Notes under the pieces: generated by a model | Databases searched by the model: none | The model's input: only the letters and a program-made list of their open reading frames with translations | Told to the model about the DNA's origin: nothing | Translations under genes and position numbers: made by a program | Source of the DNA: Macrostomum lignano | Lineage: Eukaryota | Assembly (NCBI GenBank): GCA_002269645.1 | Contig: NIVC01002486.1 | Coordinates: forward strand, 1-40,849 | Length of the DNA stretch: 40,849 nt | Reading direction: 5' to 3' | Part shown: positions 2,896 through 30,472 of the stretch, in pieces | Layout: each line of letters begins with the position of its first letter | How positions within the stretch are numbered: position 1 is the first letter of the stretch

Positions 2896-3879
2896 AATTC
2901 TTCTTTTAAAGGACTCCATGTTTTTCTTGCATTTTGCATCCTTTCAGACACCCACCGAATTCATGTAAACGAAGCGTAAAATTTCAAGTGTACTGTAGCT
3001 AAAAATCTGAGAAAAATTTCGATAACAAAACGCTAAACAAAGCCACGAGCTTCACAGCACTCAGCTGAGAAACAAAAAGTTTCTTACATAGTTGGTAACT
3101 GTTCCACTAATGTTTAAAGCATATCTGGGCAAAAATTTTTACTTTTAAGCTGGTTCTGCAAGCGGCTTAGGCCAAACTCAACTGCAAGAAATTGATGCAA
3201 GAAAAATAACTAGAAGCAACAAGAAGGGGCCGGACCGGCCTGTCCATTGCACTTGTGGCAGCTGGTCCCCTCTGTAATCCCCCCCGGATAATGGCAATTG
3301 ATTTGATCGCTTAAACCGCTTCTGTTTCTTTCCCAGACTCTGTCAATCAATACGGATTGGAATTTGAAAATAAGCAGACAGATGCAAGTAATATGCTTCA
3401 TCGCTCCAGAAGAGACAAAAAAGCATATGCAAAAGTTCTAAATCAAATCCGCCTTGTCAAACTTACCAATAAGAAAATGGTCCACAGGATTATATTGGGT
3501 AAAGATCGAGAATTCAGTAACGATTGCTCAGATTTTGTCTTGTACTGTCAAGAGTCGGCGTCTCTAAAGCGAGATTTTCTAGCATGCTTTTTATAGAGAG
3601 ACTAGCTGATAGATATAATTGTCAGCAAGGCGTGGCCCTGACCAATGGGGATTGAGATCTGGGACTGGGATCGAAGGCGGCTCGTATTTTCTATTACTAA
3701 ATTAGGCAAAGAGACTGTCGCAGGTTTTGCACAGGATTCACAGAAAATATTCTGACTATAGTATCCTATTAATCCAGATTTTTTAAATTTAGGAAAACTT
3801 ATAAACGCTCATATTTTAAAAAAAGACTTGATCTTTTAAAAAAATTAGGTAGGATTTATCAAAACATATTTTAGAGTTT

Positions 3880-4430
3880 TCCACTAGGGATTTCTGAGAG
3901 AAAATCCACGATTCTTCTTAGAAAATCGTTTCTAAGAAACGACTCGGGTTTTCTGAGGAAAAACGTTAAACTTAGAACATAAGTTTTTCTAAGAATTTTA
4001 ATTGGCTTTCTAAGAGACCGTCGATTTTTAATGACGTTATTATGATTTCTAAGAATAATAGTGGATTTATTACAAAAGTTCCACAGTTCTTTAAAACGCA
4101 TTATATGCCTGCTAAGAGATACGACCGTCGGTCTTGTGATAAAGTATCCGCATGATTTCTAAGAAATATCGGTAGGTTTTCTATGAAATAATATCCCGTT
4201 AAAAAATAATCGCTAACTTTTCACGAATAATCCCGAGGTTTCGATGCAGTATCTTGGGCCTTCTTACAAAAAAGCATCATCGGGTTTCAATGAAGTATCT
4301 AAGGATTTCTAAGAAATATGCTGGGTTTTCTAAGAAGCATCGTAGACAGTTGAAGAGATATCACCCGGTTTTGATAAGGTTTCACTGGATTTCTCCATGG
4401 GGTTTTCTAAGAAGCACCGCAGGTTTCCAA
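3880..4430. repeat. Degenerate AT-rich repeat (TTTTCTAAGAA motif)
   Basis: TTTCTAAGAA-like motifs recur at roughly 20-40 bp spacing. Confidence 0.5.
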
Positions 4431-6106
4431 TTTACAAGATAACACTGTGGTGTTGTATATTGTAACGGTAACTTCCAGTGGTCCTTAGTTCGAAGTTTGA
4501 TTATGTATACTTAGGCTACCTCCTTTTTCCTTAATGAATCTTTATCAGCGGTTATTCAGACTACGGTTTCTCAGCGCCCACTGCTCAACAAGTTAATTAG
4601 CATATACTACTGTTCTCCCGAAAATGCAAATAAGCCCAACCAATCTGCACTCAGTCTGAATGAAGCTCAGCTGCAGCCTCGTCCTACTCAAAACAATTCT
4701 CGAGTGACAAGATGCCACTCAGTCAGATTAAAATTCGAATTCGATCTTGTAGTTGTCGGCATCAATTCGAAGAAAATTTCTGAAGACAGTCTGAAATTCT
4801 GTTTGACAGAATGTTAATTATAGGCAGAACTTCGAGTCTTACCTGGGCTCAAACAGTCTGTAATTATATGACCGCTACATGCAGAAGGCAGAAGGAAGGC
4901 TGTCTGCAAAATCGTTGCAGCAAATTTTGCGACAATAGCCGGGGCCATTGCTATTCAGGAAGAAACAACAAGCGAGCAGCAGTTCCTAGGAAAATTGCTA
5001 AATTATAGTCATGCAGAACGCATCTTCGCAAAGTTGAGGCGCCCGCAATGCACCTGCTCAGATGCCACGTCTCATTATAGTTTACGCTTCAAGTTGAAGC
5101 AGTCAGCATACCTGCCTAGAGCTGAGATCCCACAACTCACTGCTCAAAGTTTAAAATTTATTAAATCGATAAAATTTGGATCAGATAGAGTTTAGATTTA
5201 CAGGTTCGAAAGCTATTTTTGACAACAAAGCAGTGCGCCAATGCAGTGCCAAAACATCCGGCCATATTTAGACGTGAGGACATGACATGAGCCAGACAGC
5301 TCAGAGACTGAGTTTGCGTGCGTGCTGAGATCAAACAATTGAGCAATCAAGTTATCAGCTCGTGCTGCCTTTTACATTCCTTACTTGAACTGAGCATTCG
5401 CTCTTTGATGCAAAGGTTTGATGCAAAGCAAATCAGATATCGTCACACAGCACCATGCAGTGCCTTGGAGGGGTTTGGCTTTCATAGCTGTGAAGTCCGG
5501 ATTGTTGCTGCAAAATGTTGACAGAAATTGCTGTTTTGATTTAACAATAACTAGAACACATCTCACCGTGAACTGAACTTGCAAATAGGTTGACAAAACA
5601 CACAGTTCTTCAGTTTACAATTCAGAAGTTTAATAAGGTGAAGCTATAGGCAGTTCGGCTTCGTAATGCTAAAAAAGGAACTGAAAATTTCCGAAATCTC
5701 GATAACTAATTTTACAACGTCCTTAGCTTCTGGCTTATTTTAGTTGGCCCACGGGCAGCATCCCGTCTGTCACTGAGCCCGTTTAGCCAGAGCCCATGGA
5801 ACAAGCCGCTGTGCTCATGTTAACAATGTCTGATTTATTATTAACTAATGCGTAACCGACTCCCGATCGCGGTGCAGCGGCCATAATAACAGTTTTGGAG
5901 GTCGTAAAACACGGCAGAAATTTCTTCACCAACCGTGCATTATGCATGGCTGAGGTGAAGCGAACCTCTCGCTGACTGTGCGCCTGCAGTTCGTTACATG
6001 TTTTGCTGGGGGATGTGACCGGGGTTAAACAATAAGTCACTGCCATGCAGTGGGAGAAAACTGGGAAGGTACAGGGGGAGAAGATAGAAGAGGGAACAGA
6101 ACAGAG

Positions 6107-7115
6107 GACACTGACAGATAGGGACAGGCAAAGACAGACAGGGACAGACAGAGACAGACACGAGACAGAAAAAGACAGACAGGGACAGATAAAGACAGGC
6201 AGGGACAGACAAAGACAGGCAGGGACAGACAAAGACAGGGACAGACAAAGACAGGCAGGGACAGATAAAGACAGGCAGGGACAGACAAAGGCAGACAGGG
6301 ACATACAAAGGCAGACAGGGACAGACAAAGACAGGGACAGACAAAGACAGGGACAGACAAAGACAGGCAGGGACAGATAAAGACAGGCAGGGACAGACAA
6401 AGGCAGACAGGGACATACAAAGACAGACATGGACAGAAAAAGACAGGCAGGGACATACAAAGACAGACAGGGACAGACAAAGACAGGCAGGGACAGACAA
6501 AGACAGGCAGGGACAGGCAGGGACAGACAAAGGCAGACAGGGACATACAAAGACAGACAGGGACAGACAAAGACAGACAGGGACAGACAAAGACAGGCAG
6601 GGACAGACAAAGACAGGCAGGGACAGGCCGGGACAGACAAAGGCAGACAGGGACATACAAAGACAGACAGGGACAGACAAAGACAGGGACAGACAAAGAC
6701 AGGCAGGGACAGATAAAGACAGGCAGGGACAGACAAAGACAGGCAGGGACAGACAAAGACAGGCAGGGACAGGCAGGGACAGACAAAGGCAGACAGGGAC
6801 AGACAAAGACAGGCAGGGACAGACAAAGACAGACAGGGACAGACAAAGACAGGCAGGGACAGGCAGGGACAGACAAAGGCAGACAGGGACAGACAAAGAC
6901 AGGCAGGGACAGACAAAGACAGACAGGGACAGACAAAGACAGACAGGGACAGACAAAGACAGGCAGGGACAGGCAGGGACAGACAAAGACAAAGACAGGC
7001 AGGGACAGACAAAGACAGACAGGGACAGACAAAGACAGGCAGGGACAGGCAGGGACAGACAAAGGCAGACAGGGACAGACAGACAGGGACAGACAGGGAC
7101 AGACAGGGACACAAA
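6107..7115. repeat. Compound GACA/GGCA micro- and minisatellite (GGGACAGACAAAGACAGGCA family)
   Basis: Almost T-free purine-rich array. It produces the spurious C/L/S/V/P ORFs at 5783-7232. Confidence 0.97.
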
Positions 7116-7228
7116 GCTAATAGAGGAGATAAACAGGATCGCAAAACAGTCCAGACCCTTCCGCAACCCTACACCAAGTCCACAACTGTAAACGGTAGCT
7201 CGTACATCAAACTGCAGTATCGAATCAA

Positions 7229-10152
<2,924 letters not shown>

Positions 10153-10394
10153 CTAAAATTATTCTAATACTAGAATTCTCAGTGTTTGCTTGCGGAAAAA
10201 ATGCTTTATAAGAACAACAACCGACTTACCATAGACTATAATACTCCTGGATAATAAAAATCAGAAATTCTTTCAGAAGTTTAAACAAAACAGTATAGTA
10301 CGAAACTTAGAAAGAGACCAGATCCAGCTACTCAAAAAGATGGCATCAAAAAGTCTCAAAGTCTCAAACTGTCGACAATGGTACCAGAGGCAAT

Positions 10395-11965
10395 TGACAG
10401 TGACACCGTGTAGATCAGACACAATCGACAGTGACATTGTGTAGATCATGCACAATCGACAGTGACACTATGTAGATCAGACACAATCGACAGTGACACC
10501 GTGTAGATCAGACACAATCGACAGTGACATTGTGTAGATCATGCACAATCGACAGTGACACTATGTAGATCAGACACAATCGACAGTGACACCGTGTAGA
10601 TCAGACACAATCGACAGTGACATTGTGTAGATCATGCACAATCGACAGTGACACTATGTAGATCAGACACAATCGACAGTGACACTGTGTAGATCAGACA
10701 CAATCAGCAGTGACACTGTGTAGATCAGACACAATTGACAGTGACACTGTGTAGATCAGACACAATTGACAGTGACACCGTGTAGATCAGGCACAATCGA
10801 CAGTGACACTGTGTAGATCAGGCACAATCGACAGTGACACCGTGTAGATCAGGCACAATCGACAGTGACACTGTGTATGTAGATCAGACACAATCGACAG
10901 TGACACCTTGTAGATTAGACACACTGTGTAGATCAGACACAATCGACAGTGACACCTTGTAGATTAGACACACTGTGTAGATCAGACACAATCGACAGTG
11001 ACACCGTGTAGATCAGGCACAATCGACAGTGACACTGTGTAGATCAGGCACAATCGACAGTGACACTGTGTAGATCAGACACAATCGACAGTGATACTGT
11101 GTAGATCAGACACAATCGATAGTGACACTGTGTAGATCAGACACAATTGACAGTGACACTGTGTAGATCAGACACAATCGACAGTGATACTGTGTAGATC
11201 AGACACAATCGACAGTGATACTGTGTAGATCAGACACAATCGATAGTGACACTGTGTAGATCAGACACAATCGACAGTGACACTATGTAGATCAGACACA
11301 ATCGGCAGTGACACTGTGTAGATCAGGCACAATCGACAGTGACAGTGTAGATCAGACACAATCGACAGTGACAGTGTAGATCAGACACAATCGACAGTGA
11401 CACCGTGTAGATCAGACACAATCGACAGTGACACCGTGTGGATCAGACATAATCGACAGTGACACTGTGTAGATCAGACACAATTGACAGTGACACTGTG
11501 TAGATCAGACACAATCGACAGTGACACTGTGTATGTCGATCAGACACAATCGACAGTGACACCTTGTAGATTAGACACACTGTGTAGATCAGACACAATC
11601 GACAGTGACACCTTGTAGATTAGACACACTGTGTAGATCAGACACAATCGACAGTGACACCTTGTAGATTAGACACACTGTGTAGATCAGACACAATCGA
11701 CAGTGACACTGTGTAGATCAGACACAATCGGCAGTGACACTGTGTAGATCAGGCACAATCGACAGTGACAGTGTAGATCAGACACAATCGACAGTGACAC
11801 TATGTAGATCAGACACAATCGACAGTGACACTGTGTAGATCAGACACAATCGGCAGTGACACTGTGTAGATCAGACACAATCGACAGTGACACTGTGTAG
11901 ATCAGACACAATCGGCAGTGACACTGTGTAGATCAGACACAATTGACAGTGACACCGTGTAGATA
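10395..11965. repeat. Minisatellite, ~31-bp unit (GTGTAGATCAGACACAATCGACAGTGACACT), ~1.6 kb
   Basis: Direct tandem array with no unique spacers. Confidence 0.98.
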
Positions 11966-12318
11966 GATGCAGATAGAACCATTAGGACATGTTGGTCTCA
12001 TCAAAAAAATCTGAAAATTTTGTGAAAAAAGATTCGACAGAGTCTTATAGAATGAATCAAGGCAGGTTAATAAGAACTCGGAGAAGATGAGCCGATTTTA
12101 ACGGTTCTGAGAAAGTAAGGGAAGTACGTTGTAAGTACGCTTGTAAGCAAACTAGTTCGAGTCTTTTGAAGGCTTGAATTAATGAAACATTTCTTGAGCA
12201 CCTGCGAACTCCCAAGTGAAGAAAATTGAGCATGCCTGAGGCCATCTCGAGTGGAACTCTATGAGCAATTTTGAGACGCACAATCAAACTAGCCGTTCCT
12301 AAGAGCAGCCAGCTAGTT

Positions 12319-12541
<223 letters not shown>

Positions 12542-13424
12542 AAGACTTATTAATAAAGGATTTGCTATCTTTGAAAAGCGGTGGTTTTTTAAATTCCCTA
12601 GTCTGAGATGGATTAGAAGCATCAGGCTTTGGATTTTTAGAGAAGGAGAATTCCCTACTACCTAAGGACAGAAAAATCTCCTCACAGCCCACTCTCATCC
12701 CGTGTTCAAAGCTTTCATTAACTCCAGAACCAATCACGATCGGTTGGCATCAAATCCAGTTCAGTCGTTTCATTCTCTCAAATTTTGTTATTGAAAGCTT
12801 ATAACAGCTCGAGACGCAGGTCCTCCAGCGGCACGAAGCGGGTTTTTAGTCCAGAACTTCTCTTGAACTGGAGCTTGTCTCAACGTACTAACAGGTAAGT
12901 TTTGCTGATATATATTGAATGTTATAGAAAGATCAACAGAGCATATTAATACATGCTCTCAGACAGGCTGCATCATGAAATTCGCTCAGTTTTTCATAGC
13001 TGCAAAAAATTCGCGCTTTAGGCGGCAAATAAATCAAATTATTTGATATTATCCAAGCCAGCAGCTTGAGTTCCCTTGAGGCTTGGATGGAGCATGGATT
13101 AGCATAATGGATTCAGTTTAGTGCTTGCTAGATCGAACTGGTCGTAGTGACGCGGTCTCAAATTCGATAGATTAGAAAAACAAGAGCAAACATAAAAATG
13201 ATTTTTCCTATTAATCGGTGACGCACCGCGAGCCATACGGCATATGGCACATTGGCATATTTTACCGACTCTCTCATTAAATATGCACCCCACAGGATTA
13301 AGTTGTAAAATATAAGCTGCGAGTAAGTAAATCTAGCCACCATTTCCTTCTTAACAACAGCAACATCCACACGAAGGATTAACTACCGCGTGCACCTTGA
13401 GATATCGTTGACGCTAATTCAAGC

Positions 13425-14015
13425 ATGGTGCGTTATGGAACGGCTTTTGCTATGGCAGTCATTGCCGTTGTCTGCTTCTTGACGGTCGAGGCTCACGAAA
13501 GCAAGCGACGCTACAACTACCTGAGGGACGCCATGCTGAGCAAGCGAGGCTACAACTACCTGAGGGACGCCATGCTGAGCAAGAGAGGCTACAACTACCT
13601 GAGGGACGCCATGCTGAGCAAGAGAGGCTACAACTACCTGACGGACGCCATGCTGAGCAAGCGAGGCTACAACTACCTGAGGGATGCCATGCTGAGCAAG
13701 AGAGGCTACAACTACCTGACGGACGCCATGCTGAGCAAGCGAGGCTACAACTACCTGAGGGATGCCATGCTGAGCAAGAGAGGCTACAACTACCTGAGGG
13801 ACGCCATGCTGAGCAAGCGAGGCTACAACTACCTGAGGGACGCCATGCTGAGCAAGCGAGGCTACAACTACCTGAGGGACGCCATGCTGAGCAAGCGAGG
13901 TTACAACTACCTGAGGGACGCCATGCTGAGCAAGCGAGGTTACAACTACCTGAGGGACGCCATGCTGAGCAAGCGAGGCTACGAATACCTGCATAAAGCA
14001 ATGAGAGAAATCTAA
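13425..14015 (+). CDS. Multi-copy neuropeptide precursor, 196 aa: signal peptide, 12 KR-flanked 11-mers and a C-terminal GYEYLHKAMREI
   Basis: Signal-like MVRYGTAFAMAVIAVVCFLTVEA. Peptides: 9x GYNYLRDAMLS, 2x GYNYLTDAMLS and 1x RYNYLRDAMLS, all separated by KR. Most unit-to-unit differences are synonymous (CGA/AGA, GAC/GAT, GGC/GGT). AATAAA lies near 14079. Confidence 0.93.
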   Translation: MVRYGTAFAMAVIAVVCFLTVEAHESKRRYNYLRDAMLSKRGYNYLRDAMLSKRGYNYLRDAMLSKRGYNYLTDAMLSKRGYNYLRDAMLSKRGYNYLTDAMLSKRGYNYLRDAMLSKRGYNYLRDAMLSKRGYNYLRDAMLSKRGYNYLRDAMLSKRGYNYLRDAMLSKRGYNYLRDAMLSKRGYEYLHKAMREI

Positions 14016-14797
14016 ATCTGGCCAAAGTTCAATAAGTTTGGCTTGGCTTTGGCTTGATACCAATATATTGGCGGTATCAATAAATTTGATGAAACCTATA
14101 CGATATAAACTAAGATTTATCAAGAAACAGTTCTTGTATTTTTCGATTTAAAATTACACAATATGCAGCCACTATTTGCTCTGAATTTATAATTTTAATC
14201 TGATCAGAGGAATAACTAATGAGTTCGCGAGATCCCCTACGGCTGTCTCTGATATATATAATAAAATATTTATTAAAGCCGATAGGCCAAGCCTTGCAAT
14301 CCTTTGATTTTCACTCTGCTTTCTGTTTCTTATTAAGTTTTTCGGTAAGAAAGACGGATTCTGCAGTGCAGGGTAGCAGAGTTATTATCGATTGATTGAT
14401 CCACCATAAAATAACTGGCTTAGTGGGATGAAATTTGCAATGATTTTTGACGTAAATAAAGCTCATATTATAAGAACTGATTCTACTGTTCAAATTTTGG
14501 CTTGTACTTTTTAATGCAGATTTGTGTATAGTTAAGACTAAGCTATTTCGAAAAGATAGTATAGAGATGATTCACTTTTATGATATTTTATCACATCTAG
14601 CCGAAAAATCTCTTATATTTAGCAGGGAAGATCTCACAACCTATGGAAGATATTATCAAGCAAGGAAACTTCATATTTTCAGAAGCATTTTACATCTAAT
14701 ACGTTTATCAACAAATTCCTATATCCAACAGAGATCATAGCACAGAAGATCTGGATCTGGATACGGTGACCGCAAGAACAACAGGATACACTACATG

Positions 14798-15561
14798 GGG
14801 CCCATCACAAGCTCGAAAAATCACATCGTCGAAAAGCATCCACCATCACAAGCTCGAAAAGTCATAAGCTCGAAAAATCATATTGTCGAAAAGTTTAGCA
14901 ACCACCATCACAAGCTCGAAAAATCATAAGCTCGAAAAATCACATCGTCGAAAAGTTTAGCAACCACCATCACAAGCTCGAAAAGTCATAAGCTCGAAAA
15001 ATCATATCGTCGAAAAGTCCAGCAACCACCATCATTAGCTCGAAAATTCACAAGCTCGAAAAGTCACATCGTCGAAAAGGTTAGCAACCACCATCACAAG
15101 CTTGAATAGGGTTAGGGTTAGAGCTTGTGCCTTAGGGTTAGGGCTTAGGGTTAGGGTCGGGGTTAGAACTAGTGCCTTTAAGTTAGGGTTTAGGGTTAGG
15201 TTAGGGTTATGGTTCAGGGTTAGGCTAGGGTACTGGTGCCTTAGGGTTAGGGTTAGTGCCTTGGGGTTAGGGTTAGAGCTTGTGCCTTTTCAAGCTTGTG
15301 ATGGTGTTTGCTAAACTTTTCGACGATGTGATTTTTCGAGCTTATGACTTTTCGAGCTTGTGATGGTGGTTGCTAAATTTTTCGACGATGTGATTTTTCG
15401 AGCTTATGACTTTTCGAGCTTGTGATGGTGGTTGCTAAACTTCTCGACGTTATGATTTTTCGAGCTTATGACTTTTCGAGATTGTGATGGTGGTTGCTAA
15501 ATCAGTTTTCGACGATATGATTTTTCGAGCTTGTGATTTTTCGAGCTTATGATGGCGACCC
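14798..15561. mobile_element. Foldback/Mutator-like non-autonomous element: long, internally repetitive inverted arms around a telomere-like core
   Basis: Arms at 14798-~15104 and ~15291-15561 are reverse complements built from CATCACAAGCTCGAAAA subunits. Termini are GGG...CCC. An exact 9-bp TSD CACTACATG lies at 14789-14797 and 15562-15570. Confidence 0.88.
15105..15290 (+). repeat. Interstitial degenerate telomeric (TTAGGG)n tract
   Basis: About 11 exact TTAGGG copies plus variants (TCAGGG, CTAGGG, TTGGGG), punctuated by GTGCC-containing spacers. Confidence 0.9.
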
Positions 15562-16156
15562 CACTACATGTGTATTATATATATATGCATGCAAGCTTTC
15601 GGACTGCTCCAGTGTATTATACCTTCGTACTAATGCGCAAAACATCGGGTGGTGTGACACAGGCAGGCAGCCACCCCACTCTCTTCTCTTCTTTTCCTTT
15701 TTGAAGCTGTCCAAATTTAGCAGAACACTGTACAGTTTGACCTTCACTACAAAACGCGTACTACATCTTGTGCGCTAATTTCATTTTTCAAACCCCAACT
15801 TCTCAGTTTTTCTTTTAATTTTTGGCGAGTACACTCATGAGCACAGTCTCGAAGTAACTGGGGGTAAAATAGTCTGTGTGTACACTATACACTTGAGCGA
15901 TGCGCCTAACGCGTGCCTGAGTGGGCGTGTATTGTTGCTGTGCTGTCTGCCGAATCTGTTAAAAAATAGATTCTCTTACAAAATTGCCCTAGCTCTCATG
16001 CTTATCTCTTACGACGTAACTGCTTCGTGTGCTTAAGCAAATTTGTTAACATAGATTTTAGTTCTGTGTTGTTTTCAATTAACGCCTGTTAGAACAGTCT
16101 AGTATTATGGATTGAAGAAACAGTTTGCGTTCGAAGTAAACTACAAGGATTGATAG

Positions 16157-19100
16157 ATGGAATTCACAAAAGAGTAAGTATAGCCGTCGATTTATTGAAC
16201 TTAACATGCACATTAGGGGATCTTGCTTTGCATCTGCACCTAAAATAAAATTTTTGAAACTATCGTACCCAGAAAAACCCTGAAAATAGATAAAATTTTC
16301 TACCTAGCAGGAAGTTTACTGAACCGCAGTTCCTCAAAAGCGTACAAGAAAAAGCGGGCAGACTTAAAGAAACTGCCTATTTAAACCAGCTTCCAAATTA
16401 TAAGCAATTAAGCGCAGTTATAAAAAAACAATGCATAAGCAGAAAATCAGAAAAAGCATTCAAGTCAAAACCAAAGCCAAGTGTCCACATTTTTGACGAT
16501 CAGTCGCGTCAAAAGTTTAGCCGAGAGTTCCGGGCCAGGTCAATAGTGCACAAAGCTTTTCCCCGCAGATTCGATCCCTACCAGGTGTTTAAAGTTGAGC
16601 AGCAGCCGTGCCAGGTGTTGCAGGTAACCGTTATAAAAGGTCGGAAGATCACCAAAGGTCGACTGTGGGATTTCAGTGAGTTGCGCGTGACCAAAACTTG
16701 ACAGAATCTGTACTACCTCATCTGATTGTAAAACCAAAAGTGAACTGTGCCTCCGCAGTTGACAAGCCGGATCCCTACGTGCAGCTGAAGATTCCCAGCA
16801 GTCCAACTGGAGTGAAGCGAACCAGCTGCATAGAGAACAACTCTGACCCCATGTGGAACGAGTCTTTCACCTTTCTGCTCGATGGAGCGAAGGAGAACGT
16901 GCTAAGTAAGTGAACTACATTTTTTATTGCACCTTCCCTAATGGGCAGATGTGCAACCGACAGCTCAGCTGCAGTAATCGCGCGGCCCATCTGAAGGCTG
17001 CGTACGGCTGTTCAGTCCAAGGACTAGGGGGGGGGGTCGCCACACACACTCAATTACCCCAGCTAATGCTGGCACCCATTTTACAGCTGGGTGAACTGAC
17101 GCAATGTAGAGTTGAGTGTCTTGCTCAAAAGACACAAATTGTTCCAGTGGAATCGGGAATCGAACCCCCTGAAATTTCAGTCGTGAGTCTGATGCTCTAA
17201 CCACTAGGCGAACTACATGTAATGCACTAATTCGAATATTCGACCAATATTCGAAAAAAACTGTCATGATAATATTTGTGCCAAAGAACCGGGACTACTA
17301 TACAACCGGTACTGATATTACTGCATCAACTATATTTTCTCTCAACTTCGTTTCAGTAATCTCTTTAATGGAAGCGAACCATTTGGGCTTGGATAGCCAA
17401 TATGGCGAAGTTTATTATCCACTAGGAGATCTTAAAATGGATCGAATGATTGCAAAAACATTCCATTTTGACAAGGTTAGTGTGTTGTAAACTGAAGGAT
17501 AAACTAGTACACTTGAAAGTTTCATGTAACTCGATAAATTTTAACCTACCGAACATTTTTTTTTCAGAAAGGACAAGTTGACATTGAATTTTACTTGAGC
17601 AACGAGTAAGTTTATTAGACCAGTAGCTATAGACCATTAAATTTTATCCCGAAATTACCGCCATCGTCAAAAGGCTTGCACTTCCACTTATCATACTGAG
17701 AACACTTTCACAACCGCGGTGTTTCTGACAGTCAAAATTTGTAAGACACCTATGATTTATTAAATATAGTTCTCAATAGCTGAGCAAGTTTACATTCAGT
17801 ATACTCAAGTCAACCACAAAGCTAATCATTTTACTTCAACTAACACATAGCTCGTTGGATTATACGATTACTGTCAAATCATCTACGAGAATAAGCCACT
17901 TCTAAACGTAAGCGCTTAAACATCTTAACAATTTACCGTAACCACCCAAACCAACCGAGAACAGCTGCAAGCCTGACCTCCGGTTCAGCCTGTGCCTATG
18001 CAACGAAGAGAAAGTGTTCCGCGAGCGTCGGCGCAAAGTCGTGTTCGAAGCGCTGCACGGACTGCTGCCCCGAGAAGCCGCTCCCGAAGCCTCGACGAGG
18101 TGCCCGTCATCGCCGTGATGGGCTCCGGTGGCGGCTTCCGAGCGATGGCCGCTTTTAGCGGAGTGTTCAACGCATTGGAGTCTAGCGGAGTGTTGGACTG
18201 CACAACCTACACTGCCGCTCTGTCAGGTAGGTTGCTAGAGAGCTACAGAGCTAGCTCAGATTATATCATATATCAATTGGTACTTGTTGTCCCGTATGTA
18301 GGTTATTTTTAATGAGTAGATCTGTAATTGCCAAACTTAACCAACTAATAGGGGTTTCACAAATCACAACGATCTTGATTCTTACGAGCAGAGAGATACA
18401 TTAAATGACAGCGCATATCGTTGAATGACAGTGCTAATTAGCTAGCGTCCTATTTGCCAATTTTTTTAGGAAAAACAGTTATAAAAGTACATCCTTGTTT
18501 TGTAGGTAGCAATGAACGAGATTTCGTTTGAATTTCTATTCAGAATTAAGTGCTAGACAATTTGGTGTCACGGAAAACGCTCAAAAACATGCGTTTAATG
18601 TGAAATGGAGAATAAAATATGAACATTCTAGATCTAGCCGTTTTCTTTGGATGCGACTTTTAGGAATTCGATTTCTTAGGAATTCTGAGACCACAGAGTT
18701 ATGGTTAATCAAGGTAAATATTTAAGTTGGTGGAAACAGCTTAAATTCATGTTTAGGGTAGACTACTATATAGAAAAGCGACTTCATGCTTTAAGTGAAG
18801 CGAAACTGCAATCATTTTAACAGTCACATGCATTAAGCTGTAGGCCAAAATCGATGCTCACAGTGAGCATGTTCAATGCTAAAATGGCTGAAGGAAGTAC
18901 ACTCGTTTACTATGAAATCGATTTACATGCCATTAACTGACACCCGCAGGCTCAGCCTGGTATCTGGCCACCCTGTATTCCCACCCGGAGTATCCCAGGA
19001 AGTCTTGCCGCATAGTGCAACAAGAAATCCGCTCTCGGGTTCAACAATCAATGCTGCGACTAGTGTCACCCAGCTACCTGTACAACTATGTGTGCCTCCT

Positions 19101-22100
19101 GGCCGAGAAAAAGCGACATGGCATACCGTTGTCATTCACCGACTTCTTCGGGTTGATGATTGGCCAGACGTTGATACCCGATGTAAGCAGTTGGATTCAG
19201 GCGCGTCGCCACCGGGGGACAGGGGAGACATGCCAACCCCCAGTAAAAGCTATGGGGGGACATGCCAATGCTTTGTTCCCCCAATCCACCTTGTTACCAA
19301 TAATCAATAATGTAATCAATAATTTTTCTTCAAGGCACCAAAATGAGTGCCTGCGGTGCCAAAATGAGTGCCTACGGCGCCAAAATGAGTGCCTACGGCG
19401 CCAAAATGAGTGCCTGCGGCGTCAAAATGAGTATCTGCGGCGCCAAAATGAGTGCCTGCGGCGTCAAAATGAGTGCCTGCGGCGTCAAAATGAGTATCTG
19501 CGGCGCCAAAATGAGTGCCTGCGGCGTCAAAATGAGTGTCTGCGGCGTCAAAATGAGTATTTGCGGCGCCAAAATGAGTGCCTGCGGCGTCAAAATGAGT
19601 GCCTGCCGCGTCAAAATGAGTGCCTGCGGCGTCAAAATGAGTGCCTGCGCGTCAAAATGAGTGCCTGCGGCGTCAAAATGAGTGCCTGCGGTACCAAAAT
19701 GAGTGCCTGCGGCGCCAAAATGAGTTCTGACAACACGATTCTTAAAATAATGTTAATGTAGGAATTTAGTCATGTATACATGAACATGTCCCCCCACGAA
19801 TAAAATCTATGGCGACGCACCTGGTTAGATTTAGTGATTTAATGTTAAAACCTTTACGACCTAATTTATGCGTCTTAAATATTCGCGAACAGCGGAAGAA
19901 AGCAGCATTTCTTATTGAAGGGACTTGGCTTGTCAAAGCGGAACACGAATTTAGCTATTGACGCGTATGGGCACCGTTAAGTGCATGAAACTGCATGAAA
20001 AAGGGTCCCTATGGTAATTATCTTAACATATTTGCAGCAAATACGAGGGGTGTTCGATATATTTCCCGATCCATAGAAAAGCAACAGTGTTTAATAAAAA
20101 ACAAATTTTAGCCCTTTCTGAAGTACTCTCCGTCTGCATCAGTGCACTTCCACATTCTCTCAAACCACATAGAAAAGCAGTTGCCCCACTCCGACTGTTC
20201 AGTTTATTGAACATTCCTCGTATAAACCTATCGAATTTAAAGTCACAAACAAAATATTTGTCAAGCTGTGCGTTGTCTGACAAAATGAATATACATTAAC
20301 TGAGAATGAGCTTCATTGTGCTGCAATACTAGTCACTCTGCCGATCATTTTATCGGAAAATTACTTAGTATCATACGCTCATATTAATTTCAGCGCATGT
20401 CCTGCAAACTGAGCGATCAATGTCAAAAAGTGAAGTACGCCAACCTTCCTTTGCCTCTCTATTGCTGTCTAAACGTTAAGAAAGACGTATCGGCGAGAAT
20501 ATTTCAAGAGTGGCTCGAGTTCACGCCGTTCGAAATTGGCTTGCCCAAGTACGGCTGCTTCCAACGAACCTGCCATTTCGGTTGCAAATTCTTCATCGGG
20601 CGGCTTTGCCGCGAATATGAAGAGCCACCGCTACACTTCTTAATGGGTAAAAGAGCTTAATGTTTGAAATCGTCTGTTTACATTTTGTTAATATTCGTAA
20701 TCGCAACGCCACATAATTTATCTTGCGCAGGTATTTGGGGCAGCGCGTTTACCATTCTGGTCAAGGATCTGCTCCGGCGCGAGATTGACTTGGAGAAGTT
20801 GTACAATGGCAACTACGAGGCTGAGCGATTCCGAGGCGAAGTTCCAAACGGGTTGGATGAAGCAGCTAAAAGACGGGGCAGCGGTAAGGCCCGGAGGACT
20901 AAAGGAATCGCAGCTTGACGAAGTCGGAGCAGTGTAGGATGAGGATAAGAAACATTGTTATGAAAAGCGTCGCTATAGAAAGTCATTGAACCAGATTGAA
21001 CCTGGCGTTCAACCAACTCGGAAGACTCACTAAGAACTCATACGATTTTCTGACATCTCATAAGGGAAGATGAAGTCGCCTCAGTCGCAACGCAGAGTTA
21101 AAGAAATGTCCTTAGAAATTTCCTGTCTAAGTCGTTCCGAGTCAGGAGAGCAATTAATCTATTTTTAGTTCACACTTTAGTCGTTATAAAGCCTCCGAAC
21201 GAGCCTCTTAACTATGCATCCACAATTCGGAAGTTCTTTCTGAATGATTTCAGCAAATTTTCTCGTGACAATGCTAACATATCGTGTTTTTGATGGGCTA
21301 ACTTTTTTTTTTAAATAAGCATCATATAAATATAAACGACTCTACGGAATGCCGTACGCGCTTGTCCAATAAATATGAACTGGGTTGACCCTAGTGATTT
21401 TTCCAATTTTCAGACTTGTCTGTTTCCTCGAACAACTCGGAGCCCCTGGGTCGTCGGCGGGCCGGCATGGCTGCGGCCAGTGGCGCTGACCCGCTGCATC
21501 CGCGACCAGTCAACAAAATTGACAAATTGCTACTGAATCTTGACGCCGAATGCAAAAACTTGCGCAGCTCCTACAACTTTGGCTCAAGCGGGATTGGCTC
21601 CATGAGCGCGCCAGTGAAGATGCAATCAAAAGGCGATAGTCTTTTTCAGTTTGTCAAGGGCGACCCGCCGTCAGAGGAGTACGGAACAATTGGTGAGCGC
21701 GTCTTGCTGTTGATCGTCGGTCTCTGGAAATAGAAACTCCTTCTGTCACTAATTTTTATTTCTTTGAATCTTTTGTACACAATTCACAGGAGACGACGAC
21801 GCCTCCTCAGTTGTGTCGCACGATTCCGACTCCGAAGAGGAACGAGGAATTTTGGAGAAGCTAGATCAACTGACTGCTGAGGACAATTCACCGCTAGGCT
21901 GGTGGGAACGATGGAGGAATAGCGTTTTCTCGGAGTGAGCCAGTACTTTGGTTGCAGAAAAAGATCTTTTGATTTCGATACATATTAATAGATACTGAAT
22001 CAAAGAAAATTATAAAATTTCAGATTGCGACTGCTCAACACCATGTCGGGCAGGGCAGCCATGGTGCACAACTTTATGCGCAGTCTTACTGTTACCAAGG

Positions 22101-24220
22101 CCTATCCTATAGCGCCATTCACTCCCACAAGACCTCGTGAAGCTGGATTTCGCTTTGAAGATGCACCGATTTCAGGTGAGCCAAACTGCGTTAGACTTTT
22201 ACTCACAGTGACCAAAATATTCATTCAAGTTTACGTTCCGCTTCCGCACGAGTTTACCGATTAAAGAAAGGTTGGTTTCCAAAAAGAAGCATTTCAGCTA
22301 CACTATGCTACTGTATGTGACTGTGTTGTTACTAGCAGTAATACCTTAAATTCCTTTATAAGTACGAGCCACCAATTATTTCACTATCTAACGATTGCAT
22401 TCTGTTTATTTACGAAGACAAATAGATCTCTAAAAAAGCTACACCTAAAATTTTTTGCAGTTGCCGGCAACGGTGATTTCCTAGAAATGTTTGAGACGGA
22501 CCAGAACTCCTTCTCCAAGTACATGCACGTAGTCGACGCTGGTCTGGCCTTCAATTCGCCCTACCCGCTAGTGCTGAGACAGCAGAGGGGCGTCGATCTC
22601 ATTTTGTCGTTTGACTTCAGCGGTAGAAAGCACGACAATTACCCGCCTTTTAAGGTGAGACAATAGTTTATTACGAGTTGTATTCATTAGTTACAAAGAT
22701 GATTGATACCCCTGCATACCTACCTATTATACTTTGGATAGCAGACGAACCATGCGATTTCGCCCCCGGATGTAACAAGTATTTGAATCGTCCGATTTAT
22801 TTGGTCAATGTGGTTATTTGCGCATTAGTATACAGTTAATTAAGTTATAGTTCGATACTTAAAACTTTGCCCTATAAACTCGTACAAAATAATCTTTTTC
22901 GTCACTTCAGGAGCTATTACTGGCGTACAAATGGGCCCTGATCAGAAATGTTCCATTTCCGCACATCACACTAGACAAATACGAGAAGAAAGGCATGCAG
23001 GAGGTTTACATCTTTCGAGACAAAGAGAATCCACGAGTGCCAATAATTATGCACTTCGTGCTGGTCAACTTATCATTCCGCGAGTTTAAAAACCCAAGTA
23101 ATAAGTTAATCCTAACTTTATAAATACCAATCACTACTTGATTCTACGGTTTGTCGATAGAAACAAGCTTAATTAAACTATTTCTTTTCCAGACGTTCGT
23201 CGGACTCTGCAAGACGAGCTAAACTTTGCAAACTTTGACATTTTTGGTGGAGAAAAGAATCCCTACAGTACATTCAACTTTGTCTACTCTCCGCTGGAAT
23301 TCGATCGCATCGCTTCCATGATGGAGTACAACACTCTTAACTGTCTGCCTCGCATCAAGAAGTGCATAGCCGAGTGCATCGAGCGTAGACGAAGCTTCGA
23401 TCTTGGAGTTCCCATCGACCAGTCGCACATGAACGACTTCCTTAACATGTCCGCCAATCTGGGCGTGAATCGCCACGACGCTAAAGTTCTTGGAAAGTAC
23501 ATAAGTCAAAGGGAGACAGAGTTCTCGCTTAACAGCTCGAGCGGAACCGGCGGCGGCGGACGCCACGCCAGACGCTGGGATTCAGACTTCGACGATCAAG
23601 ACGATGAAGATGAGGAAGAATTCGACGAAGAAATCACAACCCACGATGATGCGCAAGTTATTCAGCAGCGTAATGAAATTTCTCAAGGAAGCAATAGAGC
23701 TAAGCCCGATACCGGAAAAGAAAAAGTCAAGATTGTAGCATTCGACGAGCCAGATGGACCGCTGCAGCCACCGGAGTCGCTGCCGCATCAAGTATCGGCG
23801 ACAGCACCTACTCCTGCGCCCACACAATCTGTGAATTCGAACTCGGAAGCTTCATCTTTACGCCAGCGTAGAAAAGGTCAGCGCGGTCGCAACCAGCTAC
23901 GAGTGATCATACCGCAGCGGCCCTTCTTAGCACCAATACGACGCGACTGCCCCCGCTGTTCTGTGGCCTCGTCCTCATCATCGCCTTCATCAACATCTCC
24001 GATGGTTGGTTCGGCAAAGACTTCGCCACTTTTGCCTAAGGTTCGACAGCCGACACCGGTGAGAGTTGTTAAATCGGCGGTGACGTCGTCGTCTTCGTCT
24101 TCTGAGTTCGACACAGCAGATGAGGGGGGCGGTGGTCAACAAGCCAAGGACGAAGTTGATGCCGCCATTCGAGAACGTCTAAATGAAGATTTGCTACAGG
24201 AGCTGCAGAGATTTCATTAA
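16157..24220 (+). CDS. PLA2G4A: Cytosolic phospholipase A2 (group IVA-like): C2 domain, catalytic domain and a long C-terminal extension; ~15 coding exons; one apparent -1 frameshift near 18085
   Basis: Exons: 16157-16173 (tentative), 16569-16675, 16759-16905, 17357-17475, 17568-17606, ~17960/17972-18226, 18950-19182, 20394-20646, 20731-20883, 21414-21692, 21790-21934, 22024-22175, 22461-22654, 22911-23097, 23193-24220. Motifs: FDPYQ, DKPDPYV, PMWNESF, PDLRFS, GSGGGFRAM, ALSG|S (nucleophile), WLEFTPFEIG, G|IWGSAF, HVVDAGLAFNSPYP (catalytic Asp), GVDLILSFDFS. The acceptor of exon 6 is ambiguous. Confidence 0.95.
16921..17209 (-). mobile_element. tRNA-derived SINE with a CORE (MIR-like) domain, in cPLA2 intron 3
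   Basis: On the minus strand: A-box region CGCCTAGTGGTTAGAGC, B box GGTTCGATTCC, CORE-like TTGAGCAAGACACTCAAC...CAGCTGTAAAATGGG, and tail GCAATAAAAA. An exact 9-bp TSD GAACTACAT lies at 16912-16920 and 17210-17218. Confidence 0.85.
19198..19823. mobile_element. hAT-like MITE containing ~18 copies of a 21-bp repeat, in a cPLA2 intron
   Basis: TIRs are CAGGCGCGTCGCCA and TGGCGACGCACCTG. The 8-bp TSD is GTTGGATT / GTTAGATT (1 mismatch). The internal array (AAAATGAGTGCCTGCGGCG(C/T)C)n spans ~19335-19725. Confidence 0.82.
20044..20220 (-). mobile_element. 177-bp mariner-derived MITE/deletion derivative
   Basis: Ends are TA|CGAGGGGTGTTC and GAACATTCCTCG|TA. The minus strand encodes RMWKCTDADGEYF, resembling the mariner transposase C-terminal KCxxxxGxYF motif. 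Confidence 0.75.
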
Positions 24221-24518: not shown

Positions 24519-24637
24519 TTTTTCAACGAAACCAGTTGCATTTCAATACCTCATATTTTAGGCGTTACAGCAAAATTATCATTACTTTTTGACTTCCCCT
24601 CGTACTGCATATCAAAAAGTGCACAAATTCCGGAAGT
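24519..24637 (-). mobile_element. Isolated inverted copy of the mariner left end plus ~35 bp of its outer flank
   Basis: Its reverse complement aligns with 25002-25124. Confidence 0.8.
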
Positions 24638-25036
24638 GCACTAATACGAGCATAAAGAAGCTTTTTAAAAAATCAATTATTTATCTGCATACACATAATG
24701 ACAAATAAAAATACAACTGACATGCTTTTAGGCTACAACTCTGACAAACGAAAGCGTCTGGTCATCCAATAATCAGGTTAGGGTTGCGAATTAATCAAAC
24801 GTATGACATGAAATGTCGAAGGCATGTCCAAAAAAGCGCGTCACTAAGAGTATAATAGCTATTTCAGATCTTAGATATTATGAATACTACACAATGAGCC
24901 AGACTTTTAAGGGGCATGAGTCCGTCCTACGAATTCGGTTTCAAGAGACAAGAGTGTAGGGATCAATAATGAGGCGCTGCCGATCTCGTGATAAATACGC
25001 GACTTCTGGAATTTGTGCACTTTTTGAAAACCAGTA

Positions 25037-26037
25037 CGAGGGGAAGTAAAAAAGTAAAGATAATTTTGTTGTAACGCCTAAAATATAAGAGGTATTGAAA
25101 TTCAACTGGTTTCGTTTGAAAAAACATCTTTTGTTCTTAATTTGACAGAGTTTTGGTTCTTCTAGAGTGATCGATTTCTGCATGATGACGCTCTAATAAC
25201 AGTATACCCTTTCAGCAAAGGAAAATTAAAAAATCGAAGCTCGCACTAAGGTGAAGTTTCTTGTAAAACTTGGTTGGAAGACAGCCGAAATCATTGTCGC
25301 TTTGAAGAAGTCTATATGGACACTGCTCCACCAGATCCAACCATTTACTGCTGGATTTAGGCTTTTAGAAAACTTTTACCAACGCTTAGTGACTGGGGTT
25401 GAAACATGAATATTTCAGTATAATCCCGAATCCAAAGTCCAATCCAAGGAGTGGTTGCACAAGGTTCAGCGGACCCCAAGAAGTTCCGTGCGGAAGGGTC
25501 TGCAGCGAAGGTCTTGGCGACCATCTTCTGGGATGTTGAGGGAGTGGTGATGGTGGACTTCTTGGAAGGCCAGAAGACCATCAATGCCACCTAATATGAG
25601 TCGCTTCTGCAAAAGCTCCACTCCGAATTGGCCAAAAAGCGACCTGGCAAGCTGCACCATGTGATTCTCTTTCACCACGACAATGCACCAGCCCACACTT
25701 CTCGGCTTTGCCGTGAACCCCTTCGAGATTTCCGCTGGGAAATCCTCTAGCATCCTCCATATAGCCCTGATTTGGCTCCTTAAGACTTTTTTTGGTTCCC
25801 AAGCTGAAGGAAGCAATCAAAGGAGTCTAACATGAGGACCAGGAGGCTGCCAAAAAGGCTACTGTACAGTGACTTGCTGCACAGCCTCCTGAGTTCTACG
25901 CGAACGGCCTGGAGAGATGGCGACACCGCATGGAGAAGTGTCTGACCCTGGAGGGGGACTATGTAGAAAAATAGATTCTAATTTTAAGTTTGACACTCGT
26001 GAGAATAAAATTATCATTACTTTTTGACTTCCCCTCA
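25037..26037 (+). mobile_element. Decayed mariner (DD34D-type) element with an internally deleted transposase pseudogene
   Basis: TIR is C/TGAGGGGAAGT(A/C)AAAAAGTAA(A/T)GATAATTTT, with TA at both ends. Remnants: IEARTKVKFLVKLGWKTAEII, VTGVET*IFQYNPESK, TIFWDVEGVVMVDFL, HDNAPAH, HPPYSPDLAP*DF and KCLTLEGDYVEK*. There are multiple stops and frameshifts, and the region between the HTH and the first Asp is missing. Confidence 0.93.
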
Positions 26038-29570: not shown

Positions 29571-30262
29571 AACATAGTAAAGTCGACGACATTGAGAAAT
29601 CAATGACGTTTGTCATGTCAGTGTTTAAAACATTCGCTTCAACTTGCATAGTTTTTGCTTTTAAATCTGTATAATTTTGGCTCTACATAGCACTTTATTT
29701 TACGTCGGATAGACGCACAGTCGCACAAATATTTATTCGAATTTTCCCATTTTGATACTGATACTGATGATACACGTTCCATTTAGCTACATAAGAGCAC
29801 TGCTTTCTGCCTATTTCTAGCATACAAGTGTATTTACTCGCATAATTTATGCTCTACAGAGAAAACCTTCGAATTTTTAATAATTTTCAACTGCATGAAA
29901 ATGGCTTTCTAGCTTTGGACCTTATTGATTTGATTATTATCGCTATTGTCGAGCTTTTATTACTACAGTAGTAACCTCCGAATATTTTCGGTTTTTCTGA
30001 TTGATTTTAAGCTTACGCTTTTAAGCACGGTACAAATGAAACTAATTAATTGTTGTCTTAGCATTGTATCATGTCAAGTTAAACAACATCACTTTTCGCA
30101 AACGGCAATTAATTTTAGGGCTATTTTTAAAGCCAAACATAAAATTCGAATGTCTTAAAGAATAAGTTAAATTTATTTATTTTACTAATCGTGTTACGGT
30201 AAAGAACAAATTAAATGAAAAGCAGACTAAACCGTACTTTTAACTTGTCACGCCTGTATTAC

Positions 30263-30472
30263 TACACATTTTCACGTTCAATTCTGATCAAAGTCCAGTT
30301 CCAAAAAAACTAGCGGAAATTCAATTCAGACTGAGGATAATTTTGTCTATGGCTAAACCTTACTTCAGTTAGAATGTCTTGAGCTGGGGTTAGACTGGGT
30401 CCAAGTCTAAATTGAATTTCCGCTAGTTTTTTAGAACTGGACTTTGATCAAAATCGAACGTGAAAAGGTGTA
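30263..30472. mobile_element. Palindromic MITE, ~70-bp inverted arms, TA-flanked (Tc1/mariner/Stowaway-like)
   Basis: TACACATTTTCACGTTCAATTCTGATCAAAGTCCAGTT...CTAGCGGAAATTCAATT pairs with AATTGAATTTCCGCTAG...AACTGGACTTTGATCAAAATCGAACGTGAAAAGGTGTA. Confidence 0.82.

What the first reader, a model, noticed from the sequence alone, without database searches (positions are those of the whole stretch)
14789..15570. Foldback transposon carrying telomeric repeats at the centre of a ~0.76-kb hairpin
A discrete insertion with a perfect 9-bp TSD (CACTACATG) and GGG...CCC ends has ~270-305-bp inverted arms made of nested subrepeats. These enclose ~185 bp of one-stranded degenerate TTAGGG. When extruded as a cruciform, the telomere-like tract would be the single-stranded loop, able to form G-quadruplexes or bind telomere proteins. 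Such an element could spread interstitial telomeric sites and seed breakage or de novo telomere addition. That would be notable if the host is M. lignano, which has an unstable karyotype. It sits ~0.8 kb after the neuropeptide stop and ~0.6 kb before the cPLA2 start. Telomere-like cores are known in some non-autonomous DNA elements of other animals, so novelty needs checking.
Basis: partly seen in the sequence, partly recalled or inferred. Interest (0 to 1): 0.75.

Follow-up and report, generated by a model that had tools for sequence, protein, structure and literature searches.

The report
Foldback transposon with telomere-like centre
A 764-bp hairpin-shaped, non-coding jumping-gene relic sits between two genes of the flatworm Macrostomum lignano and has a short degenerate telomere-like repeat at its centre; the structure is real, but whether it belongs to a family that spreads telomere repeats could not be tested.

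Summary
Window 14798-15561 is a discrete 764-bp element flanked by a perfect 9-bp direct repeat (CACTACATG). It has GGG...CCC ends and two inverted arms of 309 and 273 bp. The arms are built of 62-bp units made of 16-bp subunits and are about 92% complementary. Between them lies a 182-bp centre of degenerate TTAGGG, all on one strand. The host is M. lignano: exact hits fall in assembly GCA_002269645.1. The same insertion, with the same flanking repeat, occurs in two redundant contigs of that assembly, so it is not an assembly artefact.

The best reading is a non-autonomous foldback-type DNA transposon, Mutator/Foldback-like by its 9-bp duplication. It inserted before the recent duplication of this region. 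The centre is not a neutral loop. It is five blocks, each a diverged arm subunit followed by telomere-like hexamers, in the register of the right arm.

The functional claims (cruciform loop, G-quadruplex, telomere proteins, seeding of breaks) are unsupported. Copy number, empty sites and an autonomous partner could not be tested, because no tool here searches the M. lignano genome.

Interest is modest: a new member of a known kind with one unusual feature seen at one locus.

The parts
14789..14797 (.). Left copy of the 9-bp flanking direct repeat CACTACATG (target-site duplication)
   Evidence: It is identical in the window, L001 and L002.
14798..15106 (+). Left arm, 309 bp: terminal GGGC, a 41-bp truncated unit, four 62-bp units and an inner 16-bp partial unit CCATCACAAGCTTGAA. 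Each unit is built of 16-bp subunits TCAYAAGCTCGAAAAR.
15107..15288 (+). Asymmetric centre, 182 bp of degenerate TTAGGG on the + strand only. It consists of five blocks. Read on the - strand, each block is a diverged arm subunit head (GGCACAAGCTC or a variant of it) followed by (TAACCC)n-like hexamers.
15135..15162 (+). The only canonical G-quadruplex motif (four or five G3+ runs, loops of 7 nt or less). These are the only two G4 motif starts on the + strand of the whole window.
15289..15561 (-). Right arm, 273 bp, an inverted copy of the left arm: inner 16-bp partial unit, three 62-bp units, one 65-bp unit and terminal GGGTCG (read on the - strand).
   Evidence: It is 78 bp shorter in L001.
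15562..15570 (.). Right copy of the 9-bp flanking direct repeat CACTACATG

Best explanation
Window 14798-15561 is a non-autonomous, foldback-type cut-and-paste DNA transposon of Macrostomum lignano.

Shown: it is a discrete 764-bp unit with no coding capacity. It is bounded by a perfect 9-bp duplication. Its arms are arrays of a 16-bp motif organised into 62-bp units, and the number of units differs between the arms and between copies.

Inferred: a DDE transposase supplied in trans made a 9-bp staggered cut at CACTACATG and joined the element in. A 9-bp duplication fits the Mutator/MULE-Phantom-Foldback group best. The repeated 16-bp motifs would be its binding sites. Slippage or unequal exchange changes the unit number afterwards.

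The insertion is old enough to precede the recent duplication of this chromosome region, because both redundant copies in Mlig_3_7 carry it. There is no sign of current activity.

The telomere-like centre is an internal minisatellite in the register of the right arm, made of arm-subunit heads alternating with TTAGGG-like hexamers. I think it most likely was already part of the element when it inserted. It could go back either to captured telomeric or subtelomeric DNA or to telomerase-added repeats at a break in the centre of an ancestral palindrome, later amplified by slippage. It is most likely a passive passenger with no telomere-related function at this locus.
For: - Perfect 9-bp flanking repeat placed exactly at the ends of the inverted structure, far beyond chance.
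- GGG...CCC termini with slightly asymmetric ends, GGGC versus GGGTCG.
- Arms of tandem 62-bp and 16-bp repeats at 92% complementarity.
- Hairpin energy z = -40.
- No reading frame open for more than about 90 codons and no ORF from a start codon longer than 70 aa inside the element.
- The same insertion with an intact duplication sits in two redundant Mlig_3_7 contigs and in the window. The only structural difference is a 78-bp (62+16) change in the right arm. This shows the palindrome is real and that unit number changes.
- The published Tm1 Mutator/Foldback family has the same anatomy: tandem-repeat TIRs of variable length, about 93% arm identity, asymmetric terminal motifs, 9-bp duplications and MITE-like members. 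The same paper states that 9 bp is the size typical of MULE-domain transposases.
- Centre block structure and shared GAGCTTGTG motif.
- The inner ends of both arms carry the same AAGCTTGAA variant.
Against: - No second, independent copy was found, so mobility as a family is inferred from one insertion.
- No empty site and no transposase partner were found.
- A 9-bp duplication is also compatible with Merlin (8-9 bp, from my own knowledge) and lies close to hAT and P (8 bp).
- The window is full of minisatellites, so tandem arrays as such are not transposon-specific.
- The origin and timing of the telomere-like centre are not resolved by any result here.
Confidence: 0.7

Rival explanations
1. 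The element belongs to a mobile family whose cargo is the telomeric tract. Once extruded, the tract forms a single-stranded G-rich loop (G-quadruplex or telomere-protein binding). The family thereby disperses interstitial telomeric sites that seed breakage or new telomeres in an unstable karyotype.
For: - The tract is telomere-like, on one strand only and central.
- M. lignano telomeres hybridise with (TTAGGG)n.
- One canonical G4 motif is present.
- Both Mlig_3_7 contigs end within 47 bp and about 870 bp of the element. This is anecdotal.
Against: - Only one insertion is known.
- The tract is short and degenerate: 65% of bases lie in exact hexamers, and runs of perfect repeats are no longer than about 3 units.
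- The 182-bp spacer and 8% arm mismatch disfavour cruciform extrusion (established knowledge of inverted repeats).
- The locus has stayed intact in both duplicated copies, with an identical centre.
- FISH shows no interstitial telomeric signal.
Confidence: 0.08
2. The transposon is ordinary, but the telomere-like centre is a repair scar added after insertion. In this reading the tip of the palindrome broke, telomerase or telomere capture filled the break, and slippage then amplified and degraded the tract. An ancestral arm junction ...CACAAGCTTGTG... would have been a perfect palindrome.
For: - Both arms end inwards with the same CCATCACAAGCTTGAA variant. Joined head to head, the arms would make a perfect palindrome around AAGCTT.
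- Most short interstitial telomeric tracts in mammals are attributed to telomeric insertion during double-strand-break repair.
- Internal 45-bp and 20-bp duplications in the centre fit later slippage.
Against: - A single healing event predicts one uninterrupted tract. The centre instead has five blocks, each restarting with an arm-type motif.
- The tract is already degenerate and identical in all three copies, so the event would be old.
- Nothing at hand dates it relative to insertion.
Confidence: 0.2
3. It is not a transposon. It is a local inverted duplication of a minisatellite, made by fold-back or template-switch repair that included telomere-like repeats, and the 9-bp repeat is a by-product of a staggered break.
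For: - The region is packed with minisatellites.
- No other copy occurs in 41 kb of unique sequence.
- No relative turned up in any searchable collection.
Against: - The 62-bp unit occurs nowhere else nearby, so there is no parental array.
- The ends are sharp, with GGG...CCC termini placed exactly inside a perfect 9-bp duplication. Fold-back repair does not produce this arrangement.
- The collections searched do not contain the M. lignano genome, so the negative searches carry no weight.
Confidence: 0.1
4. It is an assembly artefact, for example a palindromic chimeric long read.
For: Palindromes are a known artefact of missed SMRTbell adapters (own knowledge). Two Mlig_3_7 contigs stop close to the element.
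Against: - The same structure is present in three assembled sequences: two contigs of Mlig_3_7, and a window that spans the contig ends and differs from L002 by 0.16%.
- The arms are only 92% complementary and of unequal length.
- The flanks are not palindromic, and the centre is asymmetric.
Confidence: 0.02

Closest known systems
Tm1 Mutator/Foldback family of root-knot nematodes (PMC3169594)
   Same: Composite inverted arms made of short tandem repeats in variable number. The arms of one element are about 93% identical. It has short asymmetric terminal motifs, 9-bp target-site duplications and MITE-like non-coding members.
   Different: There is no sequence similarity: Tm1 Motif C is absent from the element. 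Here the subunits are 16 bp and organised into 62-bp units. The centre is telomere-like rather than a histone-hairpin motif. No transposase-bearing partner is known.
Drosophila Foldback (FB) elements (Potter 1982, cited; details from my own knowledge)
   Same: Long arms made of nested tandem repeats, a variable or absent central region, a 9-bp target duplication, and arm length varying between copies.
   Different: The phylum and sequence differ, and FB has no telomeric centre. Membership in one transposase lineage is untested.
Galileo and other foldback-like elements of the P superfamily (mentioned)
   Same: Foldback architecture that arose by expansion of the terminal repeats.
   Different: Galileo makes 7-bp duplications (own knowledge). 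Here the duplication is 9 bp.
Tandem-repeat-containing MITEs of bivalves, e.g. DTC84 (PMC3879986, abstract)
   Same: A short non-autonomous element whose central region is a short array of tandem repeats.
   Different: Only the abstract was read, and it says nothing about arm length. As far as I know those elements have short arms and centres of satellite monomers, not telomeric hexamers.
Short interstitial telomeric sequences inserted at double-strand breaks (review PMC6410037)
   Same: A short internal tract of TTAGGG-type repeats in one orientation.
   Different: This tract lies at the centre of a transposon-like palindrome. It is degenerate and interleaved five times with an arm-derived motif.

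Membership tests
Foldback-type transposable elements (structural class) | Long inverted arms composed of tandem subrepeats that make up most of the element | tested here: met
   The arms are 309 and 273 bp of 764 bp, with 62-bp units of 16-bp subunits at 92% complementarity.
Foldback-type transposable elements (structural class) | Target-site duplication flanking the element | tested here: met
   Perfect 9-bp CACTACATG on both sides. The chance rate is 3.6e-4 or less.
Foldback-type transposable elements (structural class) | Dispersed multi-copy family with independent insertions | not testable with these tools
   No tool searches the M. lignano genome. Indirect attempts found nothing. The three copies at hand are one insertion.
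Foldback-type transposable elements (structural class) | Arm length varies through changes in repeat number | tested here: met
   The left arm has 5.0 units and the right arm 4.5. The L001 right arm is 78 bp (62+16) shorter.
Mutator/MULE superfamily (including Phantom and FB) | 8-10-bp, typically 9-bp, target-site duplication | tested here: met
   The duplication is 9 bp. The typical size is as stated in PMC3169594.
Mutator/MULE superfamily (including Phantom and FB) | An autonomous relative with the same termini that encodes a MULE-domain DDE transposase | not testable with these tools
   The window has no transposase ORF. The genome cannot be searched here.
Tm1 family (Meloidogyne) | Shared TIR motifs A-D, e.g. 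Motif C CGATTCAGTATCCGC | tested here: not met
   Motif C has no match in the element even with 3 mismatches.
Fusion-type interstitial telomeric site | Head-to-head (TTAGGG)n(CCCTAA)n | tested here: not met
   There are 11 TTAGGG and 0 CCCTAA, and no hexamer coverage on the opposite strand.
Short interstitial telomeric sequence from telomerase-mediated break repair | A tract present against an orthologous or paralogous empty site, inserted without a transposon | not testable with these tools
   No empty-site sequence was obtainable. Both paralogous contigs carry the whole element.
G-quadruplex-forming sequence | Four or more G3+ runs with loops of 7 nt or less | tested here: met
   There is one locus, 15135-15162. 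Whether it folds was not tested.

The most novel reading that the evidence does not exclude
M. lignano harbours a family of foldback transposons whose consensus includes a telomeric-repeat core. Transposition would then scatter short one-orientation TTAGGG tracts, below FISH resolution, through a neopolyploid genome with an unstable karyotype. These tracts could act as preferred sites for breakage, for recombination between dispersed copies or for telomere seeding.
Probability: 0.12. Interest if true: 0.7.

Novelty: new member of a known kind. Interest (0 to 1): 0.35.

Why it matters
As it stands, this is a clean example of a foldback-type non-autonomous DNA transposon in a basal flatworm. It is useful for repeat annotation of a genome that is hard to assemble, and it lies 587 bp upstream of a cPLA2 start codon.

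It would matter more if the telomere-like core proves to be a family feature. Transposon-borne telomeric tracts would then be a concrete, testable source of cryptic interstitial telomeric sites in a species known for karyotype instability. Four searches of the held paper library found no description of a foldback element or MITE with a TTAGGG core. Repbase and Dfam could not be consulted, so this is not proof of novelty.

Tried and rejected
Searches for further copies:
- A protein search with the translated arm found nothing.
- An exhaustive HMMER search of the representative library with a 59-aa arm peptide gave one hit, an unrelated repetitive 1047-aa protein.
- Exact look-ups of the two ORFs inside the element were not on record.
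- DNA pattern scans of JGI metagenomes (two patterns), prokaryote genomes and IMG/VR all returned 0. This was expected, since none of them holds flatworm genomes.
- nhmmer with a profile of the 62-bp unit and a sensitive blastn of the element against the rest of the window found nothing.

Searches for an empty site or other paralogues:
- The cPLA2 composite query returned only distant animals.
- The cluster look-up found nothing in the collection.
- Exact look-ups of four flanking or downstream ORFs were not on record.

Other checks:
- Rfam gave only a sub-threshold snoRNA chance hit.
- The assembly-artefact idea was rejected.
- A telomere-fusion origin was rejected because there is no CCCTAA.
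- Tm1 membership was rejected.
- I looked for mirrored unit variants between the arms as a sign of a single inverted duplication. Units do not pair by position, apart from the shared innermost AAGCTTGAA variant.

Full report
**What is there**

A perfect 9-bp direct repeat, CACTACATG, lies at 14789-14797 and 15562-15570. It brackets a 764-bp unit (14798-15561) that starts GGGCCCATCA and ends TGATGGCGACCC.

The left arm (14798-15106) is GGGC, a 41-bp truncated unit, four 62-bp units and a 16-bp partial unit. The right arm (15289-15561) is the inverted counterpart with 3 x 62 bp, one 65-bp unit and the end GGGTCG. Each 62-bp unit is built of 16-bp subunits of the type TCAYAAGCTCGAAAAR. That motif occurs 17 times in the element and nowhere else in the window, against 0.14 expected. 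The longest gap-free inverted matches are 217-226 nt at 92%.

As single-stranded DNA the element folds into one long hairpin of -280.8 kcal/mol, against -84.6 +/- 4.9 for shuffles.

The 9-bp flanking repeat is not a chance feature. In a shuffled window it appears at a rate of 3.6e-4 even with +/-5 bp freedom, and never at exact positions. In the real window the only other 9-bp matches at this spacing lie inside a minisatellite near 37 kb.

**The centre**

The 182 bp between the arms (15107-15288) hold 11 exact TTAGGG and no CCCTAA. Exact hexamer rotations cover 65% of bases on the + strand and none on the other strand. TRF scores it as period 6, 27.5 copies and 63% matches, with superimposed 45-bp and 20-bp periods.

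It is not a featureless loop. Read in the orientation of the right arm, it splits into five blocks. Each block begins GGCAC(A/T/C)AG(C/T)TC or a shortened form and continues with (TAACCC)-like hexamers. That head is a diverged copy of the arm subunit GTCATAAGCTC. The centre is therefore a continuation of the right arm in which the A-rich spacer of the subunit is replaced by telomere-like repeats.

Both arms end inwards with the same variant, CCATCACAAGCTTGAA. Joined head to head, they would make a perfect palindrome around AAGCTT.

Canonical G-quadruplex motifs (loops of 7 nt or less) are confined to 15135-15162. With loops up to 12 nt there are three more.

**Host and independent support**

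The neuropeptide-like ORF 783 bp upstream (13425-14015) is found exactly in two contigs of GCA_002269645.1. Papers identify that accession as the M. lignano assembly Mlig_3_7, accession NIVC00000000.

L002 (NIVC01001526.1) is 99.8% identical to window 3424-15617. L001 (NIVC01000463.1) is a redundant copy, about 95% identical in the repeat-rich left flank and 99% in the right flank. Such redundancy is expected: 180 Mb of Mlig_3_7 lies in duplicated blocks at least 95% identical, because line DV1 carries extra large chromosomes.

Both contigs carry the element with the same 9-bp repeats. The sequences are identical apart from single-base differences (mostly one-base indels), a 3-bp insertion in L002's right arm and a 78-bp (62+16) shorter right arm in L001. 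This has three consequences:
- The palindrome is not an assembly artefact.
- Unit number changes over short evolutionary time.
- All three copies are one and the same insertion, which predates the duplication. They give no information on mobility as a family.

Both contigs stop 47 bp and about 870 bp to the right of the element. That may reflect trouble assembling through it, but it is anecdotal.

**What it most likely is**

The anatomy is that of a foldback-type, non-autonomous DNA transposon. It has sharp ends inside a target-site duplication, arms that are arrays of a short motif, unequal arm lengths, slightly asymmetric tips and no coding capacity. No ORF from a start codon exceeds 70 aa, and no frame stays open for more than about 90 codons.

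The closest described analogue I found is the Tm1 Mutator/Foldback family of root-knot nematodes. Tm1 has TIRs of roughly 14-bp tandem repeats in variable number, arms about 93% identical, asymmetric terminal motifs, 9-bp duplications and MITE-like members. Its authors note that 9 bp is the size typical of MULE-domain transposases, and that foldback architecture has arisen independently in several superfamilies.

This element is not a Tm1 member by sequence. Superfamily placement therefore rests on the duplication length alone. Merlin (8-9 bp, own knowledge) cannot be excluded.

The mechanism I commit to has three steps:
1. Insertion by a trans-acting DDE transposase through a 9-bp staggered cut. 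This is inferred.
2. The 16-bp motifs act as transposase binding sites. This is also inferred.
3. Array length later drifts by slippage. The 78-bp polymorphism shows this directly.

**The telomere-like tract**

M. lignano telomeres hybridise with (TTAGGG)n, and FISH shows signals only at chromosome ends. A 180-bp degenerate tract would be invisible to FISH, so this neither supports nor refutes dispersed tracts.

Two origins are plausible:
- The tract was part of the element when it inserted (captured telomeric or subtelomeric DNA, or an ancestral healing event).
- It is a later repair scar at the palindrome tip. The review literature attributes most short interstitial telomeric tracts to telomeric insertion during break repair, and lists transposition by mobile elements as another possible route.

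The five-block interleaving with an arm motif and the degeneracy argue for an old tract amplified by slippage. Nothing at hand dates it relative to the insertion.

A 182-bp spacer and 8% arm mismatch make extrusion from duplex DNA unlikely (established knowledge of inverted repeats). The locus has also stayed intact in both duplicated copies.

**What could not be done**

No available collection contains the M. lignano genome. Copy number, independent duplications, empty sites and an autonomous partner therefore remain untested.

Indirect routes all failed:
- translated-arm protein searches;
- exact look-ups of element ORFs and of flanking ORFs;
- a cluster look-up;
- DNA pattern scans of metagenomes, prokaryote genomes and viral contigs.

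Within the window there is no second copy or fragment.

**Verdict**

The transposon reading is supported at about 0.7. The telomere-biology reading is unsupported at this stage. The element is a new member of a known kind with one unusual feature seen at a single locus. A single BLAST of the arm against the M. lignano assembly would decide whether it deserves more attention.

Noticed in passing
window 13425-14015 (+): A 196-aa neuropeptide-like precursor: signal peptide followed by 13 tandem copies of (G/R)YNYL(R/T)DAMLS separated by KR sites, encoded by a 39-bp repeat (TRF 13500-13991). AATAAA signals at 14079, 14260 and 14455 lie before the element.
   Followed up: partly
window about 16157-24220 (+): A cytosolic phospholipase A2 gene. 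The probable start is ATG at about 16157 (MEFTKE, spliced to FDPYQVF at about 16573). The C2 exon is 16698-16913 and the lipase exon with GSGGG lies near 18090-18230. The best database hits are 37-40% identical cPLA2s with PF00168 and PF01735. The foldback element lies 587 bp upstream of the ATG.
   Followed up: partly
L002 end (= window 15617) and L001 end (= window about 16444): Both Mlig_3_7 contigs that carry the locus terminate 47 bp and about 870 bp to the right of the element, whereas the window reads through. The palindrome or the adjacent TA-repeat may have broken the older assembly.
   Followed up: no
window 15334-15411 versus L001: There is a 78-bp (62+16 bp) length difference in the right arm between the redundant copies. 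The left arm and the centre differ only by one-base indels.
   Followed up: yes
window 24519-25122: Another MITE-like structure in the gene-poor stretch downstream of the cPLA2 gene: inverted arms of about 40-88 nt (88-91% complementary) around a centre of about 360-520 bp. Flanking duplication was not examined.
   Followed up: no
window 30260-30475: A small inverted repeat (49-nt arms, 90% complementary, 118-bp spacer) in an AT-rich stretch. It is MITE-like and was not characterised.
   Followed up: no
window-wide, e.g. 10-956, 6113-7111, 9137-9723, 10391-11964, 19339-19725, 32950-33610, 37202-38072: The window has an exceptionally dense set of minisatellites with 19-42-bp units. They create long spurious ORFs on several strands. 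This is consistent with the published 13-15% tandem-repeat content of the genome.
   Followed up: partly
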